From assembly GCF_000315625.1 (NCBI RefSeq), contig NW_005434652.1, positions 634,091 to 698,090 on the forward strand: DNA of 64,000 nucleotides, in the 5' to 3' direction. Position 1 is the stretch's first letter; each line of letters begins with the position of its first letter. Positions 37,306 through 46,532 of this stretch are shown here, in pieces. Below the pieces are notes generated by a model that worked only from the letters and a program-made list of their open reading frames with translations, made no database searches and had not been told where the DNA came from. Both the position numbers and the translations under genes were made by a program. Origin of the DNA: Guillardia theta CCMP2712 (Eukaryota > Protista > Cryptophyta).

Positions 37306-39680
37306 ATGCTGAGCGTCTTGCTGCTCCTCTCTCTGCTCCCCTTGAGCGACGAGACACGCGGAGCAGAGCCCTCCCCATGCTCAGCCTTGCTGCGCCTCCG
37401 AGGAGGAGGGAGCGATGCGTTGAAGGAGGTGAAGTCCGCCATGCAGTCTGGTTACGTGAGCTCGATGGTGTTCTCGGACGAGGATGAGGTGGTGTCAGAG
37501 GACATGTGAGGCCTCCTCTCTCTCAACTCTCACTCACTCGCCATCAGAGTGCCAGTGCAGGTGCTGCCTGTGGGGTACGAGAACAGCTCGAGCCTAGAGA
37601 GGGATCTAAGGTGTGCGAGGGGAGTAGGACAGTTTGGCAGACTGAAGCGCAGCCAGGGAGATGAAGGAGAACTTTCCTGATCTGACCGTGAGCAGAGGGC
37701 ATCCAAGAACAGGCACGAAGAAGTTCGAAGCTCTCTGCCTTCAGTATCTCAAAGTGTCTTGCCAGGAAGAGAGTACTTGGCAGCGATTCGAAGGGAGTAT
37801 GAGGAGTCCGACGCTGTGGAGGCGCAAGCCATCAGATCGCTCATTCTCGACAAAGGTAGTACATGCTTGTTGGTCGTGCATTGCGATCGCTCAGTTGACC
37901 ATGCGCTCTAGATGGATACATCCCCAAGGCGTTGTACGGGCAAGAGAGCGGAGCAGCGTCCAAGGAGGAAAACGAGTTGAGGTAGAGAGGGTTGTCGCCT
38001 GTAAAGCACCTTATGCGTCTTATGCAGCAATGGTGACTTCCCGAGTGTGAGTCAATTCTATCCAGGTGGTCAAGATGCCTCGACACCTCCCTCATGCTGT
38101 TAAATCTCTGCAGAACTCCGCAAACACAACCAAGTACCAAATGCCAAGGGCTCCAACAGCAGCAGCTCAGTTCAAGCCGGAGATGATGGTGATTTCGCCG
38201 TCAGACGTCTGAGAAGCGAAGGACAAGCTGTGAAGTGGGCAGAGGCTGAGGAGTTCCAACGAAGATGGAAGCGATTGGACTACAGGATTCATTTGGCTCG
38301 CACGCGACGAAACCTCGTGCCTGGGAACCTTTCAAGCCAAGTAGCGTGAGATTTGCTTGCTGCTAGCATGCTGATACGTCCAAGGTACTCCCCGTGCTGG
38401 AGGAACTCAACATCCGGCTTAGATGTGTCAGCAAAGAGAAGATAGTGATGATCGCTGGAGAGCTGTTCGAGCAGTTGATTCGAATGAGAGAATCGGTGAT
38501 GGAGTGGGAGATTGATATAAGAAGTGTCTTTCATCGTCTGCTTCATACTTGTTCCTTATGGCGTGTGAAGTTGCTAAAGCAACTGGCAGAAGCTGAAGCA
38601 GACAACTGTCACCCCTTGATCGAACGAGTCGCAGCATTTGACCTGGTCACGATTACTTTGAATTCGATGCTGAGAGGCAACGAGACAAGAACGTCGTTCG
38701 AGTCTCCCTGGATTCTTGACAGCATCGCTAAGACAAAAAGATCGACCAAGCAGCGCAAGTATCGCTCCTCAAGGAAGGAGCATGCGCTTCCGGGCATGAA
38801 GGATCTCTCAGCCTGTTGTTGGGATACTGAAGTGATCTGTCGCAACGCTAGTAAGAGTTGCTACAGCGCTGGCGGTTCTGACGGTTCTGACGGAGCTCCA
38901 GAAATTTCAGAAGGAGGTCGCATTGTGAAGATCGTGGGGGAAGGAACTGTCCTTGTCCAAGGTGGTCTGACTTTCTTCATCTGCCACTTAAATGTCTGCA
39001 GAGCCGCCAGAGCAACTCTCAGCAGAGAGGAGGATGGTTTTCATCTATGCCCAAGACATCCAAAGCAAAGACGCATTTGTCGGGGTCGTGAACCTCAAGG
39101 CTTGCAAGAGTCTTGGCGCCGATCGGTTGACCTTCCTCTCCCTCTCCCTCTCTCTCCCTCCCCCCGTTTGATCAGCTTGTTCAGTTACCTCCCGGAGATC
39201 GGGTACGGCGTGCGCGGCGGCAGCAGCAGGAACGGTCGGTTGAAGAGCACGCCGCAGGTGCGTGGAGGGGAGTGAGGGTGGGGCGAGCTCGCTCATGATG
39301 CCTTGCAGTACCTCAAGGGGTCTCGCACGGTGGAGCGCGACTTCTTCGTCTCAAACTTTCGGACGGGACAAGTGAGTGTCTCAACTTTTCATCTTCTGTA
39401 GTTGAGAAGCTTTCAAGATCATATGCTTGCTCCTTGACAAAAACACCAAAACTCTAGATTATTTCCTCGATGGAAAGTTCCAGGTCGTGGCAAAGTCTCC
39501 GATCTTTGCTCTGACTTCACTTTGCTGACCAGGGCACCGTGTTCAGCGACTTGCAGGTCGAACAGCTCAGGTTCGCAGTCTCAAACGGATGGTATACGAT
39601 GCTTGCCGTTCTCTTATGAATGACAATCGAAATCAGGCAGGGGTCAAGCGAATTTGCTGTAGTCGGCTGTTTCATGTAGA
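37306..39680 (+). CDS. Hypothetical multi-exon protein with signal peptide followed by LRLRGG
   Basis: Starts MLSVLLLLSLLPLSDETRGAEPSPCSALLRLRGG, with many short GT-AG introns and a 293-aa ORF at 38394-39275. End approximate. Confidence 0.6.
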
Positions 39681-39768
39681 ATAGAAAGAACTTAAGATGC
39701 TTGGAGTATAGTACAACAAGAAATGCTTGTAGCGTAGTACAACAATCCCTTGCCCGCGTTTGTTAGAT

Positions 39769-42700
39769 TCATTCTTGATGTGTCAAGAACTCCTCTGAGC
39801 GGGATGTCAGTGCAAGAACAAGACGACAGAAGCTCGGCTGACCGATAGTGGCGCGCAGCCCATGGTTCGGAATGATCTGCCACTCACCGTCAACGAGAGC
39901 ATGGTGAAGTGCGAAGGTTCAAGGAGTACTTGTTTCGATTTCAATCTCAAGTTGGTCAGAGGGTCGGTGTTGTGGTCCTGAACGAGTTTGATCTGCTTGT
40001 TCGCGAGCAAGCTGGAGTACCTGCAGCCATTGAACTATGGCGCTCTTCTCGTAGCTCAGGCCGGTCTCAGCCACAATGTGAGGGTCTCGCATGACCTCCT
40101 GCTCAAGCCTCGTCAACCCTCAGACTGGTTTCACTTGCCTCCCACCTGTGTGATGGGACATCGAAATCCATCCGGCACGTTTTGCTGTCACACGAATCTC
40201 TTGTCAATGATTTCGTCACTCAAGGCCTCTCTTGCCTTCAATGCCCTTCGCGCCTTGTCAAGTTTCTGCGCAAACGCTTTCGTTTTCCCCTCCTTCTTGT
40301 AGTCACGACCAGAAAGAAGCACAAAGTTCACACCATGAGTTCGATTTGCTTCAAGGAGATGTTGACCATGTCGCTTTCAAGAAGCATGTCGAGTATCTGT
40401 AGCGGACTTAAATCTGAGTTTCTCCTGCAGTCACCGTCAAGTATAGCAAGTCTTTGCAGTCACTCCAGGTGTTATACTTGACATCGTCTCTGTGTAGCGC
40501 ATTCTCCGCCATAAGCTGTCAGCACAACGTCAGAAGGGTGGGAGGTAAAAGGCACGACTACCTTCTCTTGCTGCAATTCCATCGAGGCATTGACAGCGAG
40601 CAGCTCTTCGATCCTCTCCTACGCAAACCATGATGAGATCACAGCCGTCAGTCAGGTGAAGTTCTGACTTGCAACGAGCGATGCGACACCTCAAGCTGAG
40701 AAGTCAGAGGTCAGAGGCGATGCTGAGAACCGCGCGAGAGACCTGCAGGTTTGAGCTTGTCAAGGAGTCGACCTGCACCAGGAGCTCAGCGGCAACAGCA
40801 CGTGACTCGTCTTGTCTTACTTGAGTCTCCAAACGTTCAATCTTGTCGTTTGCAACGGATTGTAACTCACTCAGTTGGACCTCAAGCATTCTGATTGTTT
40901 CAAAGAAGCTCTCGCTCTCTGCTCCATCCACTGATGCGACGCTTGCAAACTGTTTCATTTGATTCTCCAGCGATCTCTTCACCAAGTCGATGTCCAACTC
41001 ATGGGACTGGGGCTCTTCTCGGTTGTCCTTGGCTTCGAGAGGTAACAGAGCGTCGTCAGGGTATTGCATGAGATAGCCGACATTGCTTGTGTTTGCTGCC
41101 TTCAAGATGTTCTCTGACGCTTCTTCTAGCCGCGCGTTGTTCCCTTCAGCTACGCGATCGCTTCTAATTTCTATGCCAACGAAATCACCATAACCCAAGT
41201 CATGCTGGGAAAACAAGGCAGCGCGGTCAGCCAAGGGCTTTATAGTAGCTCCCAGCCCAACGACGTGCAGAGAGAGCTGCAAGGCAGGCGATCAAGTGTG
41301 GCAGGAGGAGGCAGGGAACGCACCTGGTCGGAGCTGAGGTCAAGTCTCGACGCGATCCTTCGCTGAGGTTCGTCACGCTCTCGCTCATCCCAACCGACAG
41401 CAGCATCGGATCCCCAATCAGCTCAGGCGGCAGTTCACCGCAAGTCGAGCTGTCTCGTCGGATTCTCACAAACTCCACGTATTGATGGGGCAGCTGAGCG
41501 CTGTAGTCGTCGCCCGCGACCTCCTCGGCTCGCAGGGTCACGCGGTCGGGATTGAAGGAGATGATCTCGTCAGAGTCCTGGCGCATCTTTCAGCTCCTCC
41601 CTCCCCTCCCTCATCTTTCTACCTGGAAAAAATGTAGAATGCGGTGATCGTGCACTGCTAGCAACCGCAGATCTCCTGCTCCTCGCACTGGAGCCATCTG
41701 CCGTAGTTTTCGCATTATGTCATCAAGACAGGTGTTGGTTGATAAAGTCACAGTGAACGCAAGCTCTCTGGTTGCTTTCGGGCCGTACCATGCGATAGTC
41801 GTATCTATGCTTTCTCGGTCTTTCAGCACTTGCATGTACAACATGTAAGGAGCCTTGTGGCTGAAGCCGAACTTCTCTCTGCCGAGACGCTGCCGAGCAA
41901 GAAGATGCAGGATGCTATTAGAGGTCCTGCCTTGAGTCTGTGCGCAAGAGTCATCCCATAGCAAGGTCGCTGCTGGGGAGTTTGTAGCCACATCATGGTC
42001 GCAGAGCAGCAAGCGAGTCCCTGCCTCTGAGGCTGCAGGAGAAGAGACTCTGATCGTGTCCAGGAGCTCAAGAAGAGGAGCCCTTGCCTCCATGGTAAGG
42101 AAGAAAGGTTCAAGCCTAAGATCGTTCGATCCTCTTGTGAGTTGCAGTTTCTGAAGCAGCAGGTGCACCTGTTGAGCATCGGTTCTCTGGCCTCGCAAGT
42201 AGAGCGTGCTGCCGTCATGCAAGCCTGAGAGTCTGACAGGCTTGGAGTCCATCAGAGGTTTCAGACCCCCGTCGGCTTCTCGCCAGCCAAAGATTTCATC
42301 CCCCCTTGACAACCTCCAACTCTGCATGACGTTTATGTACAAATCGCGTAGAAGTGTCTCGTCATGCACAGTGTAGCATCCTGCATACTTGAAAGATTTG
42401 AGAGATTCATCATGCACTTTGACAAACAATCTCTTCGATCTCTCTGACAGCAAGCTCTCTTGCTTCAAGAAGATCAATTGCAGGCTATCACCCGCATGTT
42501 CCAAGCAGTCTAAACCATGGTATAACTCTGCTGATGTAATTCTTGCACACCTTGAAATTCCATCTTTGCACCTGGCGTTGTACAACACAAACTGCTCTTT
42601 CTGAATCCATGTATGATCTTTCGACAATTGATCGACAACATCGATGAGTCGGCATCTAGCAGATACATTCCTTTGAGCGACAGTGGACGCATCAAACAAA

Positions 42701-43263
42701 TCAATTCCCAGGTGAGATTTCAAGTCGCTTTCAAAGATCGCACAGAGCTTGATGGTCTGCGTGTCTCTGACCTCAGAAATGACCTCGGGAATGGCATCAA
42801 CACGTCGGAAAACACCATGCACAATGATATTGCTGTCATTCATGTATCCTGCATGCACATCCTTCAACAAATCAAGAGTCATGAAAGTTTCAAACCCAAA
42901 TCTCCTTTGAGGAGACCCTCCAGTTTGCGAGAAATCAGCCACTTCATCCATACTGATTGAAAGGTTGTCATCTTTTTGGTTTCTTATGGTCAGTCGATAT
43001 TCAAACACATGCGCCTCTTGTGACAAGTCGCAAGCATCGCAAAACTCCACGAACAAGCCAACAACAGGAGTTCTCCTCATCTTCATCCCAGTCCCTGCAG
43101 AAACTTCTTCCTTCATCCTTGGTGCAAGAACTAAGCGGCAGTTCCTTCCGAATGCTTGAAACTCTCGACTATACACATCTGTTCGCGTTTCTTGTGCGGA
43201 CAAATTTTCAAAATTCCAGTTAATTGGATCTTGCAATGTCCAGTGAAATTCTGTTACCCCCAT
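39769..43263 (-). CDS. MATH + USP7-like C-terminal UBL domains + coiled coil + U-box protein
   Basis: MATH: EFHWTL..F....VYSREF..FG..CRLVL.P...GLFVE...RFGFETFM. USP7 C-terminal-like motifs follow. Spliced U-box VPDGFRCPITQEVMRDP..AETGLSYEKSAIVQWL.DHNTDPLTN...IIPNHGLRATI. The 5' end may extend toward the gap. Confidence 0.8.
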
Positions 43264-43585
43264 CTGGATTTTAGCGCTCGATACAGCGAAGAAAGTCTCA
43301 AGAAGGTGGAGATGTTGTGAGAATTGGAGAAGCAAGCGGGAAATGAGAGGGAGAGAGAACGATCTGGAAGGGGAGAGAGGCGAGAGAGAGTGATTGATTA
43401 GCTGGAGATCAGCAGCAGGGGAGAGGAGAAGAGGCAAGGGAGAGGGAGAGGGAGAGGGAGAGGGAGAGGGAGAGGGAGAGGGAGGAGGGAGGAGGGAGGA
43501 GGGAGGAGGGAGGAGGGAGGAGGGAGGAGGGAGGAGGGAGGGGAGGGGAGGGGAGGAGGGAGGAGGTAGGAGGAGGAGGAGGAGG

Positions 43586-43685
43586 NNNNNNNNNNNNNNN
43601 NNNNNNNNNNNNNNNNNNNNNNNNNNNNNNNNNNNNNNNNNNNNNNNNNNNNNNNNNNNNNNNNNNNNNNNNNNNNNNNNNNNNN
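43586..43685. other. Assembly gap (100 N)
   Basis: N run within GGA/GGGA repeats. Confidence 1.
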
Positions 43686-43990
43686 AGGAGGGGGAGGGAC
43701 GAGAGTGAGGCGTTTGCTGCAAAGCCGAGGGACTATATGGAAACTTCAGAACATCAACCGGACCTACTCACTGACAAGGCTCAAAACTTCCTCGAACTTG
43801 AAACATTGAAAGTTGCCGCGACAGAGGTCGAGCGTAAGCTCTCAAGATGAAGAAACATTATTTTACGTGGTCACGTACAAACTTAAAAACAAAATACACC
43901 TAGCTTTTCTGTCCCCGAGAGTTTTTCCACTTGTCTCTTTGTAATCCATCAGTCTTCACGCCAACCAAAATACATTCCACACCGCTAGTC

Positions 43991-46532
43991 CTAGAACCGT
44001 TGCTGCTGGTTCATGTATAAATGCCGTTGCAAAGGGTCCTGAGGCATAGCACTTTGAGGAGGGTAGAAGTAATACTGATCCATCCCGTATGGCACTGACG
44101 GGTCATTCATCATTCCAGGCTGAGGACCAGGAAGCACAGTTCCTTGCGCTAGCATATCGTAAGACTGACTTGTGTCTGGTCGACAGTTCGATGGAAACGG
44201 TTGCATGCTGTCATTCATCATTCCATTCAAACCGAGATTGCAGCTTGTTGGAAGATAACAGTCTTGCAAAGAACCGTCGCCTGTCGCAGTAGAAGGGGCT
44301 TCAAAGAGCCTGATTTTGTCTTCTTGACTCAACCCAATATCATCAGGATGGAAAGGCTTGTCCATGTCCTGGAGGGCCTGTGCAAAACTAGTCATGTTGT
44401 TGTTGATCATGTAGCTATAGTTGGAGCCATTGGAGCTTGGAGTTGGAGGGATCTGTGGAAATTCTGCTTGAGCTGTAGGAGAAGGTAGGGGAATTTCCAT
44501 CTGGGCTACCCGCAGATTAGTAAGATTGTCGGGTCTTGGTTGTTGCTGTCTGCTTCCAAGCTGATAAGGATTCTCTTGTCCAACCAAATGAGCACTCTGC
44601 ACTCTACGAGGTTGTGGAGTGAAGTTCGGAGGTAAAAATGAACCGTTTTCAGCTGCAATCAACGCTTTCCTCTCGCTCTCGGTGAAGATCGAAGCATCCA
44701 CATTCGCCGCAGAGTTTGGTGGATGGATACCATCCTTCGAGCTCTTCTGCATCAGGTATGATCAGAAGAGGTCACTGCAAAAGTCAAGTACCTCTGCTGC
44801 TACATTCCCCATGTTGCGATTCAGATTTGAGGCAGCTTCGACCAAAGGAGCAAATCTCCTTTCGAGGCATTTGCAGAGGAGATTAAGTTGGTGTCTTCCT
44901 TTTGGGGTCTTCTGCATGTCAGCGATACTAGTGTGAAAGTCCTCTTGATATGAGGCAAGCAACTCTCGCGCAGATCTATCATCGTCCATGTCGATAGACA
45001 TTGGTCTCGTCATTGCTGGATTTCGTAGCCTGGCTTGATCAAATTGCTCAGGTGTGACTAGCCTGAAGAAGTGCCGGATTTGTTCAAGTCTTCCCACACA
45101 GTCGAATTGTTTTTGAACGCTGTAGCATATCCTGCGTCGCAAAAAAAAAGAAAAAAGTAAAACGTCCATTCCCATTGATTGAAACAAGAAGAGAGTACTC
45201 ACAACGAACAGACAGAGTCATCGTTCCAATTCATTCTCCATCGAAGGTAACGAGAAATGGTTGCTTCCCTTGTTCTGAGTATTTCATCCATCAAATAGCA
45301 TAAGAACTCTATTTCCGACATGAGAAGTGGAATATCTCTCCTTGCTATGCGATCCAACATCACCTGAAGGACGAGGAATGAACAGAGCATCGGTCAGTAT
45401 CATGAGCAATGCAACCGTCACATTTCACCTCTTTGGTCATTCCAAACATCTCCGCAAGTTGGTTTGTGACATGAACGCCTTTACGTTTTTTCTTTATGGG
45501 ATCCCAGATCATGCGCATACATCCAGTGTCGACACTCTTCTCCCACATGTTGTTTTCCATCTGTTCGACTATGCTGCCACCCGAATACTCATGGCAAGTC
45601 ATGCTGACTTCCTGTTGAACAGGTGCCTAAAAATTAAGTGAACTGGTGATTACAGACTAACAAGCAGAAATATGTTCTTACTGCGCTCTTTCTTGCCAAA
45701 ATAATTGCATCGACTGCGGAGAGTCCAACCTTAATGACACGTTCAAGATCCTTTGGCAGTGACGAAAATATTCGAATCATCGATTCAGCCTCTAGCCCTG
45801 TTTCCCAATACCTTCATGACGAAAAGAAATTCAGAATCGCAAACTTGCTTTGACTTTCTTTTTTACCAGTGCAATATTGCAAAGGGCCATCCAAGCTCAT
45901 GCATTCTGACAGTAAGCGAACACTCGCTTGAAAAAGAAATCGCAGCATTCAAACTGTGCAATAGACAGAAGTCAAGTCACACTCTAAAGGTCCACAAGAT
46001 ACCTTGCACTTCTAGGGATTTGAGCAAAACTTTGTGCTGTAGAGTCTTGTTTATGAAGAACCGGAGCTCCTGCAATGGATTCTGCATACCCCGGAATTTC
46101 CTTTCTATTTCTCCCATAACGATCATTTGCTTGGGTGTAAGATTCTACGTATTCGTCTCGATCATCATAACGATCGGACTTCTGCCATTCTGAGCACAGT
46201 TCACTCTGTCCATTCCTAGCACAGCGTCCACATGGTCTGGCCTCGTCACACTTCAGCTTAGATTTTCTACAATTTTCGCAAGCTCTGGATACAAGTCTCC
46301 TTCTCTTCTTGCTTCCACCAGGGCCATCATTGTAATCCTGAGTATCAGAACCATCTAAAGTCCTTGATCCTGAATCACTATCAAAGGGAATATCTGCCGG
46401 GATTCCTGAAGAACTATGTGTCTGATCTGGTGATGTCGAGACTTGGATATCATTCACACTTTCCGGAAGCCAGTTGGCAGCGCCATCCAGCCCCATCTCA
46501 GGCAGTCCCCAGTCCGAGTAAATATTTGCCAT
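43991..46532 (-). CDS. Zn(II)2Cys6 (GAL4-type) transcription factor with possible PAS-like domain and P/Q/N-rich C-terminal activation region
   Basis: KRRRLVSRACENCRKSKLKCDEARPCGRCARNGQSELC, then downstream exons to a low-complexity C-terminal ORF at 43991-44752. The start may be further upstream. Confidence 0.85.

What the first reader, a model, noticed from the sequence alone, without database searches (positions are those of the whole stretch)
39769..43263. USP7-like scaffold with the deubiquitinase domain absent and a U-box E3 ligase appended
Seen: within one uninterrupted ORF the MATH domain runs almost directly into sequence resembling the USP7/UBP12 C-terminal UBL array (IKLCAIFESDLKSHLGIDLFD, RLFVKVHD..KSFKYAG, LRLLAVHDHRILHFF, TLRAEEV, PMLLSV..SESV..L, DFVGIE). 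No USP Cys-box or His-box is present. A coiled coil and a complete spliced U-box follow. Established: USP7 is MATH-catalytic-UBL1-5. Inference: the substrate-recognition modules of a DUB have been rewired into a ligase, which could ubiquitinate USP7 clients or antagonise USP7. The UBL similarity is judged by eye and is divergent.
Basis: partly seen in the sequence, partly recalled or inferred. Interest (0 to 1): 0.75.

Follow-up and report, generated by a model that had tools for sequence, protein, structure and literature searches.

The report
USP7 chassis turned U-box ligase
The alga Guillardia theta expresses a gene whose protein keeps the two binding modules of the deubiquitinase USP7 (MATH domain and ubiquitin-like domain array), lacks the protease domain entirely, and ends in a U-box ubiquitin-ligase domain; this build recurs in other protists and appears in no paper that my searches found.

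Summary
The window is from Guillardia theta. The gene is GUITHDRAFT_136887, annotated only as a hypothetical or U-box protein.

- **USP7 homology:** a profile of this protein and seven relatives hits only human USP7 in the PDB (E 1.8e-26). It matches three colinear stretches: MATH 112-207, UBL1-2 560-774 and UBL4-5 871-1055. The jump from residue 207 to 560 skips exactly the catalytic domain.
- **Independent support:** profile-profile comparison with canonical USP7s gives 99.65% probability over 464 columns. AlphaFold models retrieve USP7 structures first.
- **No protease domain:** no UCH domain lies in the protein or on the whole contig.
- **One transcript:** spliced transcript contigs from two studies join the long exon to the U-box exons through 13 introns.
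- **Model errors:** the reads show a 1-base deletion in the reference, a false intron and two missed exons in the database model. The real protein is about 958 aa.
- **Relatives:** the same build occurs in Hanusia phi and in divergent environmental eukaryotes (25-30% identity).
- **Canonical USP7:** Guillardia also keeps one.

USP7's client-binding residues (D164/W165 and E759/D764) are replaced, so shared clients are unlikely. Ligase activity is inferred, not shown. The scan has not noted this on other DNA.

The parts
39769..43263 (-). Whole coding region: 14 exons and 13 short introns (41-53 nt), about 958 codons once the reference's missing base is counted
   Evidence: Joints in transcript contigs X1 and X2, absent from the DNA-like run X14. 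Splice sites and exon frames were checked by script.
41623..43263 (-). Exon 1 (547 codons): MATH, linker, UBL1, UBL2, the UBL3 region and the first part of UBL4
   Evidence: Translation. It is 100% identical to P0001 residues 1-547 and contiguous in transcript contigs.
42820..43215 (-). MATH/TRAF-like domain (residues 17-148)
   Evidence: PF22486 at 35.2 bits. The Foldseek search of the exon-1 model matched USP7 TRAF domains at TMt 0.68-0.75, ahead of SPOP.
42757..42819 (-). Linker of about 20 residues at the place where USP7 carries its 350-residue catalytic domain
   Evidence: The profile alignment jumps from USP7 residue 207 to 560 across profile positions 133-139. pLDDT is below 50 at residues 157-166.
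42190..42756 (-). UBL1-UBL2 pair (residues about 170-358)
   Evidence: Profile match to USP7 560-774. Local pLDDT is about 80-90. Foldseek matches USP7 UBL1-2 structures 4pyz and 9a0x at rmsd 3.5-3.7 A and TMt 0.60-0.72 (0.61-0.73 for the Hanusia model).
41854..42189 (-). UBL3-equivalent region (residues about 359-470); divergent and modelled with low to moderate confidence
   Evidence: hhalign aligns it colinearly with the USP7 UBL3 region. HMMER finds no separate hit, and pLDDT is 51-85 and low.
41169..41853 (-). UBL4-UBL5: the end of exon 1, exon 2 (41324-41577) and the first 36 codons of exon 3. It contains two introns.
   Evidence: Profile match to USP7 871-1055, USP7_C2 Pfam hits and translations.
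41363..41364 (.). A one-base deletion in the reference assembly. All three contig runs carry an extra T on the + strand here, which restores the frame.
   Evidence: table 4. Protein P0005, from a near-identical organism, reads straight through this point. The Hanusia transcript aligns across it.
40236..41168 (-). Linker between UBL5 and the U-box, probably helical or coiled-coil, spread over exons 3-9
   Evidence: Weak coiled-coil Pfam hits. The heptad script found segment 713-758 but was not specific. This part is inference.
40669..40695 (-). In-frame 27-nt exon present in the transcript contigs but missing from database model P0001
40236..40292 (-). In-frame 57-nt exon missing from P0001. 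Its 19 residues match the segment just before the U-box in relatives P0006 and P0020.
   Evidence: relatives' sequences.
39772..40178 (-). U-box domain over exons 10-14 (four introns inside it); the intron just upstream, 40185-40235, uses GC-AG
   Evidence: PF04564 at 65.8 bits, covering profile positions 1-71 of 73. phmmer hits to solved U-boxes of plant PUBs, LubX, CHIP and UFD2, best E 6e-14. Joints.

Best explanation
This is a real, expressed, single-copy Guillardia theta gene of 14 exons and about 958 aa. Its order of parts is MATH domain, short linker, five USP7-type ubiquitin-like domains, a helical (probably dimerising) linker, and a U-box.

It descends from a USP7-like gene whose catalytic domain (human residues 208-559) was removed cleanly. 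A U-box ligase module was added at the C-terminus.

The most likely mechanism is that the U-box recruits a ubiquitin-charged E2, while the MATH domain and the UBL array act as the substrate- or partner-binding platform. The protein would then write ubiquitin where its ancestor erased it. Its clients are probably not those of USP7, because the known USP7 client-contact residues are replaced.

Shown: the architecture, the homology, the transcript structure and the conservation in other organisms. Inferred: ligase activity, dimerisation, and the role of MATH and the UBLs as receptors.
For: - **Identity:** exon 1 is 100% identical to GUITHDRAFT_136887.
- **Homology to USP7 with the catalytic domain missing:** the family profile hits only USP7 chains in the PDB (E 1.8e-26), in three colinear stretches that skip residues 208-559. 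hhalign against canonical USP7s gives 99.65% over 464 columns.
- **Pfam:** thresholds are passed for MATH_2, USP7_C2 and U-box in Guillardia, and for USP7_ICP0_bdg and USP7_C2 in Hanusia.
- **Structure:** the AlphaFold models' best PDB matches are USP7 UBL arrays (2ylm, E 7.9e-24), near-full-length USP7 (9a9w_O, E 1.2e-17) and the USP7 TRAF domain.
- **One transcript:** a single 4.7-kb transcript contig (X2), and X1 from another study, carry all 13 minus-strand introns. The DNA-like run X14 carries none.
- **Conservation of the build:**
  - On contig L004, a MATH+ICP0_bdg+USP7_C2 ORF is followed 40 nt later by a 72.7-bit U-box ORF.
  - L006 has the same order of domains.
  - P0006 and P0020 end at the start of the U-box, at the same intron position as in Guillardia.
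  - P0007 has USP7_C2, then a linker, then a U-box.
- **Not a replacement for USP7:** a canonical USP7 with a UCH domain exists elsewhere in the genome.
- **U-box quality:** it matches active, solved U-box ligases.
Against: - No biochemical evidence of ligase activity or of any client.
- The UBL3 region is weakly conserved and poorly modelled.
- The coiled coil is not rigorously shown.
- The RNA status of X1 and X2 is the tool's guess. It rests on their spliced joints. The one certified RNA run (X19) gave only 8 reads.
- The full corrected protein was never searched or folded as one chain.
- The organisms behind the environmental relatives are unknown.
Confidence: 0.72

Rival explanations
1. 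The protein is a ligase-dead scaffold or decoy. It uses USP7-like surfaces to sequester partners or to regulate the canonical USP7, and the U-box serves only as an interaction or dimerisation module.
For: Nothing here shows activity. USP7's UBL45 regulates its own catalytic domain, and Guillardia keeps a canonical USP7. The P0007 contigs carry a truncated U-box.
Against: The U-box scores 65.8-72.7 bits over the full profile in Guillardia and in L004. It aligns without gaps in the core to active PUB, CHIP and LubX U-boxes. It is kept across relatives only 25-30% identical overall, which suggests selection on the U-box itself.
Confidence: 0.15
2. It is a ligase that targets the same clients as USP7, or USP7 itself. 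This would make a writer/eraser pair built on one recognition scaffold.
For: The MATH domain and UBL array are homologous to those of USP7. The two genes coexist in the genome.
Against: - D164/W165 of the MATH peptide groove are R/F here, and the W position is L in relatives. All four canonical USP7s aligned keep DWGF (PMC7873624).
- UBL2 E759 and D764 are G and S here (PMC4457826).
- The protein is only 14-20% identical to USP7 UBL regions, and no closer to Guillardia's own USP7 than to others.
Confidence: 0.1
3. It is an annotation or assembly chimera: two neighbouring genes (a MATH-UBL gene and a U-box gene) wrongly merged.
For: Gene callers that do not model introns split the environmental homologues into separate ORFs. 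Transcript contigs can merge overlapping genes, and X2 does merge a convergent plus-strand transcript at the 3' end.
Against: - Thirteen same-strand canonical introns link all exons in frame, with no stop codon, from the ATG at 43263 to the TGA at 39771-39769.
- The same domain order recurs on one strand in L004, L006, P0006, P0007 and P0020.
- The exons between UBL5 and the U-box are conserved in sequence with the relatives.
Confidence: 0.03

Closest known systems
USP7/HAUSP (plant UBP12/13), peptidase family C19
   Same: It has the N-terminal MATH/TRAF-like domain and a colinear array of five C-terminal ubiquitin-like domains (Pfam USP7_ICP0_bdg plus USP7_C2). USP7 is its best sequence, profile and structural match.
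   Different: - The USP catalytic domain (human 208-559) is entirely absent.
- D164/W165, E759 and D764 are replaced.
- No recognisable C-terminal activation peptide.
- A helical linker and a U-box follow UBL5.
U-box E3 ligases (CHIP/STUB1, plant PUBs, UFD2, Legionella LubX)
   Same: It has a full-length C-terminal U-box with the conserved core. As in CHIP, the U-box follows a helical region that could dimerise.
   Different: The substrate-binding part is a USP7-type MATH plus UBL array. CHIP, plant PUBs and UFD2 use TPR, ARM or the UFD2 core instead. I found no paper describing this combination.
MATH-containing ligase systems: TRAF proteins (RING, coiled coil, MATH), TRIM37 (RING, B-box, coiled coil, MATH), SPOP/BPM (MATH-BTB adaptors of CUL3)
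   Same: It follows the same logic: a MATH peptide-binding domain tied to an E2-recruiting module through an oligomerising helical region. This comparison rests on my own knowledge of those families.
   Different: - The order is reversed, with MATH at the N-terminus.
- It has a U-box instead of a RING or a BTB.
- Five UBL domains are inserted.
- The MATH domain is structurally closest to that of USP7 rather than SPOP.
Pseudo-deubiquitinases such as USP39 and PAN2/USP52
   Same: They too are USP-family descendants that no longer deubiquitinate. This comparison rests on my own knowledge.
   Different: Those proteins keep a degenerate catalytic fold. Here the fold is gone and an opposing enzymatic module has been added.

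Membership tests
USP7/HAUSP deubiquitinases | N-terminal MATH/TRAF-like domain | tested here: met
   PF22486 at 35.2 bits, above its cut-off. USP7 TRAF structures are the best MATH matches, TMt 0.68-0.75.
USP7/HAUSP deubiquitinases | USP (UCH, PF00443) catalytic domain with Cys and His boxes between the MATH domain and UBL1 | tested here: not met
   No UCH hit at E<=1 in P0001 or P0002. Only about 20 residues separate MATH from UBL1. The profile alignment skips USP7 208-559. None of the genome's 47 UCH matches lies on contig C22.
USP7/HAUSP deubiquitinases | Five C-terminal ubiquitin-like domains (USP7_ICP0_bdg + USP7_C2) | tested here: met
   Pfam hits are above cut-off in the orthologue and relatives. 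hhalign gives 99.65% over 464 columns. Foldseek hits 2ylm at E 7.9e-24 over the whole array. UBL3 itself is weakly supported.
USP7/HAUSP deubiquitinases | C-terminal activation peptide that inserts into the catalytic domain | tested here: inconclusive
   The alignments end at UBL5. The segment after UBL5 is conserved only between Guillardia and Hanusia and shows no evident likeness. No dedicated test was run.
USP7/HAUSP deubiquitinases | Client-contact residues D164/W165 (MATH) and E759/D762/D764 (UBL2) | tested here: not met
   In Guillardia these are R/F and G/D/S, and the relatives keep even fewer. The roles of these residues come from PMC7873624 and PMC4457826. Guillardia's own USP7 keeps DWGF but also lacks the UBL2 acidic residues.
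U-box E3 ubiquitin ligases | Complete U-box domain of about 70 residues matching PF04564 | tested here: met
   65.8 bits against a cut-off of 21.4, profile positions 1-71 of 73. Best solved match is the plant PUB 7c96_B at E 6e-14, followed by LubX, CHIP and UFD2.
U-box E3 ubiquitin ligases | E2-dependent ubiquitin transfer | not testable with these tools
   This needs an in vitro ubiquitination assay.
U-box E3 ubiquitin ligases | The U-box is on the same polypeptide as a substrate-binding module | tested here: met
   Spliced transcript contigs join all 14 exons in frame. The same domain order is seen in L004 and L006.

The most novel reading that the evidence does not exclude
The family is the ligase counterpart of USP7. 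It would be a writer built on the eraser's own recognition scaffold, acting on an overlapping set of chromatin or DNA-repair clients, or on USP7 itself, in cryptophytes and related protists. One ancestral recognition module would then serve both directions of ubiquitin signalling.
Probability: 0.1. Interest if true: 0.8.

Novelty: new variant of a known kind. Interest (0 to 1): 0.6.

Why it matters
Ligases and deubiquitinases are usually thought of as separate lineages that meet only as binding partners. USP7 itself pairs with ligases such as ICP0 and UHRF1.

Here the non-catalytic chassis of a deubiquitinase has been kept, its protease removed along domain boundaries, and a ligase module attached. 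The result has been conserved long enough for relatives to diverge to about 25% identity. This is a natural experiment in swapping the direction of an enzyme while keeping its recognition scaffold.

The case is useful in three ways:
- It offers a test of whether the USP7 UBL array works as an autonomous interaction platform.
- It adds an undescribed U-box ligase class to a poorly studied algal lineage.
- It corrects a public gene model (one assembly indel, one false intron, two missed exons).

Its limits are that the function is untested and that the known distribution is narrow.

Tried and rejected
- **Single-sequence search of the PDB:** phmmer with exon 1 found nothing at E<=1. Only the family profile reached USP7.
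- **Word-index homologue search, three tries:**
  - Exon 1 and the family alignment found only the Guillardia protein itself and its Hanusia orthologue.
  - Guillardia's USP7 found only Hanusia's USP7.
  - So I got no named survey across eukaryotes and no deep USP7 alignment for a rooted tree. I therefore did not attempt a phylogeny of origin.
- **ESM Atlas:** the search by features gave no usable hit. By structure it gave USP7 clusters at low TM.
- **Identifying the organisms behind the environmental contigs:** comparing their neighbour genes with the Guillardia genome was inconclusive. The PDI was 25-35% identical and a carrier fragment 69%.
- **Heptad script for the coiled coil:** it also passed windows in the globular part, so it is not evidence.
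- **Pseudo-DUB with a degenerate catalytic domain:** considered and rejected, because there is no room for one.
- **Recent duplication of Guillardia's own USP7:** considered and rejected. Identity to it (15%) is no higher than to other USP7s (17-20%).
- I used exon references, the database model P0001, and the Hanusia orthologue P0002 for the complete UBL5.
Full report
**What is there.**
The finding lies on the minus strand of a Guillardia theta CCMP2712 window. Exon 1 (41623-43263) is 100% identical to the first 547 residues of GUITHDRAFT_136887. This is an 894-aa database model named only "hypothetical protein" or "U-box domain-containing protein". The ATG is at 43263 and no in-frame ATG lies upstream. 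The stop TGA is at 39771-39769. A 100-N assembly gap at 43586-43685 lies in CT-rich sequence upstream of the coding region.

**Is the middle really USP7-like?**
Exon 1 alone gives only sub-threshold Pfam hits to USP7_ICP0_bdg and USP7_C2, although they are in the right order. The evidence becomes strong as more sequence is used:
- The full database model passes the USP7_C2 cut-off. The Hanusia phi orthologue (P0002, 56% identical) passes both USP7_C2 (57.5 bits) and USP7_ICP0_bdg (32.5 bits).
- An exhaustive profile search of 1.84 billion representatives found six more divergent relatives: P0004, P0006, P0007, P0018, P0020 and P0039. They carry the same domains and no UCH domain.
- A profile of these eight proteins, searched against all PDB sequences, hits only USP7 chains. 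Full-length human USP7 scores E 1.8e-26 in three colinear stretches:
  - profile 37-133 to USP7 112-207 (MATH)
  - profile 139-337 to USP7 560-774 (UBL1-2)
  - profile 433-608 to USP7 871-1055 (UBL4-5)
- The jump from residue 207 to 560 is exactly the catalytic domain.
- hhalign of the family against four canonical USP7s gives 99.65% probability, E 4e-25, over 464 columns. The match runs from UBL1 to the end of UBL5.

**Structure.**
An AlphaFold model of the Hanusia UBL array has mean pLDDT 63.7. UBL1-2 are near 90, the UBL3 region is low and UBL5 is about 80. Its first 22 Foldseek hits in the PDB are all USP7 UBL arrays, led by 2ylm at E 7.9e-24. UBL1-2 superpose at about 3.7 A.

A model of the window's own exon 1 has mean pLDDT 72.8. 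Its best match is near-full-length USP7 (9a9w_O, E 1.2e-17). USP7 UBL arrays come next, then USP7 TRAF domains (TMt 0.68-0.75), ahead of SPOP MATH domains. The ESM Atlas's own model of the protein also has USP7 clusters as structural neighbours.

**Is the protease really absent?**
- No UCH hit appears at E<=1 in either orthologue.
- About 20 residues, modelled as disordered, separate MATH from UBL1.
- Exon 1 is contiguous in transcripts.
- None of the genome's 47 UCH matches lies on this contig.
- The genome has a separate canonical USP7. It is an intronless 1150-codon ORF on contig C14 with MATH, UCH, USP7_ICP0_bdg and a weak USP7_C2. Hanusia has one too (P0155).
- The family is single-copy in Guillardia.

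**Is it one transcript with the U-box?**
Contigs of two probable RNA runs from different studies (X1, X2) lie on 39500-43400 with 13 minus-strand joints. A DNA-like run (X14) is colinear with the genome. One X2 contig of 4.7 kb carries every joint from exon 1 to the last U-box exon.

A script placed the splice sites. Twelve introns are GT-AG and one is GC-AG (40185-40235). They are 41-53 nt long. All exons are in frame. X19, the one run certified as RNA-seq, gave only eight reads. The few reads inside the gene body have the orientation expected for a minus-strand RNA in the usual stranded library.

**Corrections to the public model.**
1. All three contig runs carry an extra T after 41363, so the reference has a one-base deletion. 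With that base, exon 2 (41324-41577) reads through continuously. This agrees with the Hanusia transcript and with protein P0005 from a near-identical organism. The database model avoids the frameshift with a false intron, which deletes about 35 residues of UBL5.
2. The transcripts contain two in-frame exons missing from the model: 40669-40695 (9 aa) and 40236-40292 (19 aa). The second is homologous to the segment just before the U-box in P0006 and P0020.

**The U-box.**
PF04564 scores 65.8 bits over profile positions 1-71 of 73. The domain is split over five exons. It matches solved, active U-boxes: plant PUBs (E 6e-14), LubX, CHIP and UFD2.

**Conservation of the build.**
- **L004** (9.1 kb, metagenome): a 933-aa ORF with MATH, USP7_ICP0_bdg and USP7_C2 is followed 40 nt later, on the same strand, by an ORF with a 72.7-bit U-box.
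- **L006**: MATH+ICP0_bdg, USP7_C2 and U-box ORFs follow one another on one strand.
- **P0006 and P0020**: both stop at the first U-box residues, at the same intron position as in Guillardia.
- **P0007**: USP7_C2, then a linker, then a U-box.

These relatives are 25-30% identical to the Guillardia protein and form at least three deep groups. I could not identify their organisms.

**How it probably works.**
The best-supported reading is a U-box E3 ligase whose substrate- or partner-binding platform is the USP7-type MATH domain plus UBL array. The two parts are joined by a helical linker that may dimerise. The coiled-coil evidence is weak. Ligase activity and receptor function are inferences from domain identity.

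- D164/W165, on which P/A/ExxS binding centres (PMC7873624), are conserved as DWGF in all four canonical USP7s, including Guillardia's. In this protein they are R/F, and the W position is L in the relatives.
- Of E759, D762 and D764, all required for KxxxK clients (PMC4457826), Guillardia keeps only D762.

The protein is also no closer to Guillardia's own USP7 (15% identity) than to other USP7s (17-20%). It is therefore not a recent duplicate.

**Novelty.**
Four literature searches turned up no description of a USP7-type scaffold fused to a U-box, or of this gene. The Pfam domains are precomputed in public databases, so the parts are visible, but the architecture has not been discussed in the papers searched.

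I class it as a new variant of a known kind: a U-box ligase with a new, USP7-derived recognition module. Earlier notes of this scan report other unusual U-box and RING fusions in the same genome. That is context only and I did not test it.

Noticed in passing
window 41363-41364: The reference assembly lacks one base that is present in contigs of three independent runs. This frameshift caused the false intron in GUITHDRAFT_136887.
   Followed up: yes
window 40185-40235: A GC-AG intron among twelve GT-AG introns. All 13 introns are 41-53 nt long.
   Followed up: partly
window 39529-39892: The transcript contigs also carry a joint at 39590/39636 with GT..AG on the plus strand. The few stranded RNA reads at 39631-39892 have the opposite orientation to those in the gene body. 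A convergent plus-strand transcript therefore seems to overlap the 3' end and last exons of this gene.
   Followed up: no
G000:C14 (L003:3299-6748, minus strand): Guillardia's canonical USP7 is an intronless 1150-codon ORF in an otherwise intron-rich genome. Its UBL4-5 region is divergent (USP7_C2 only 19.2 bits), and it also lacks the UBL2 acidic residues E759 and D764.
   Followed up: partly
L007, L008, L009 (JGI sample 3300017172): Three contigs share the P0007 gene but differ downstream of it. The encoded U-box lacks its middle part, which may reflect an exon-skipped isoform or a mis-assembly.
   Followed up: no
window 43401-43700: A 100-N assembly gap (43586-43685) sits inside a long CT-rich low-complexity tract, just upstream of the gene's 5' UTR.
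   Followed up: no
window 43991-45202 (minus) and 38394-39275 (plus): The neighbouring long ORFs have no Pfam match at E<=0.01.
   Followed up: partly
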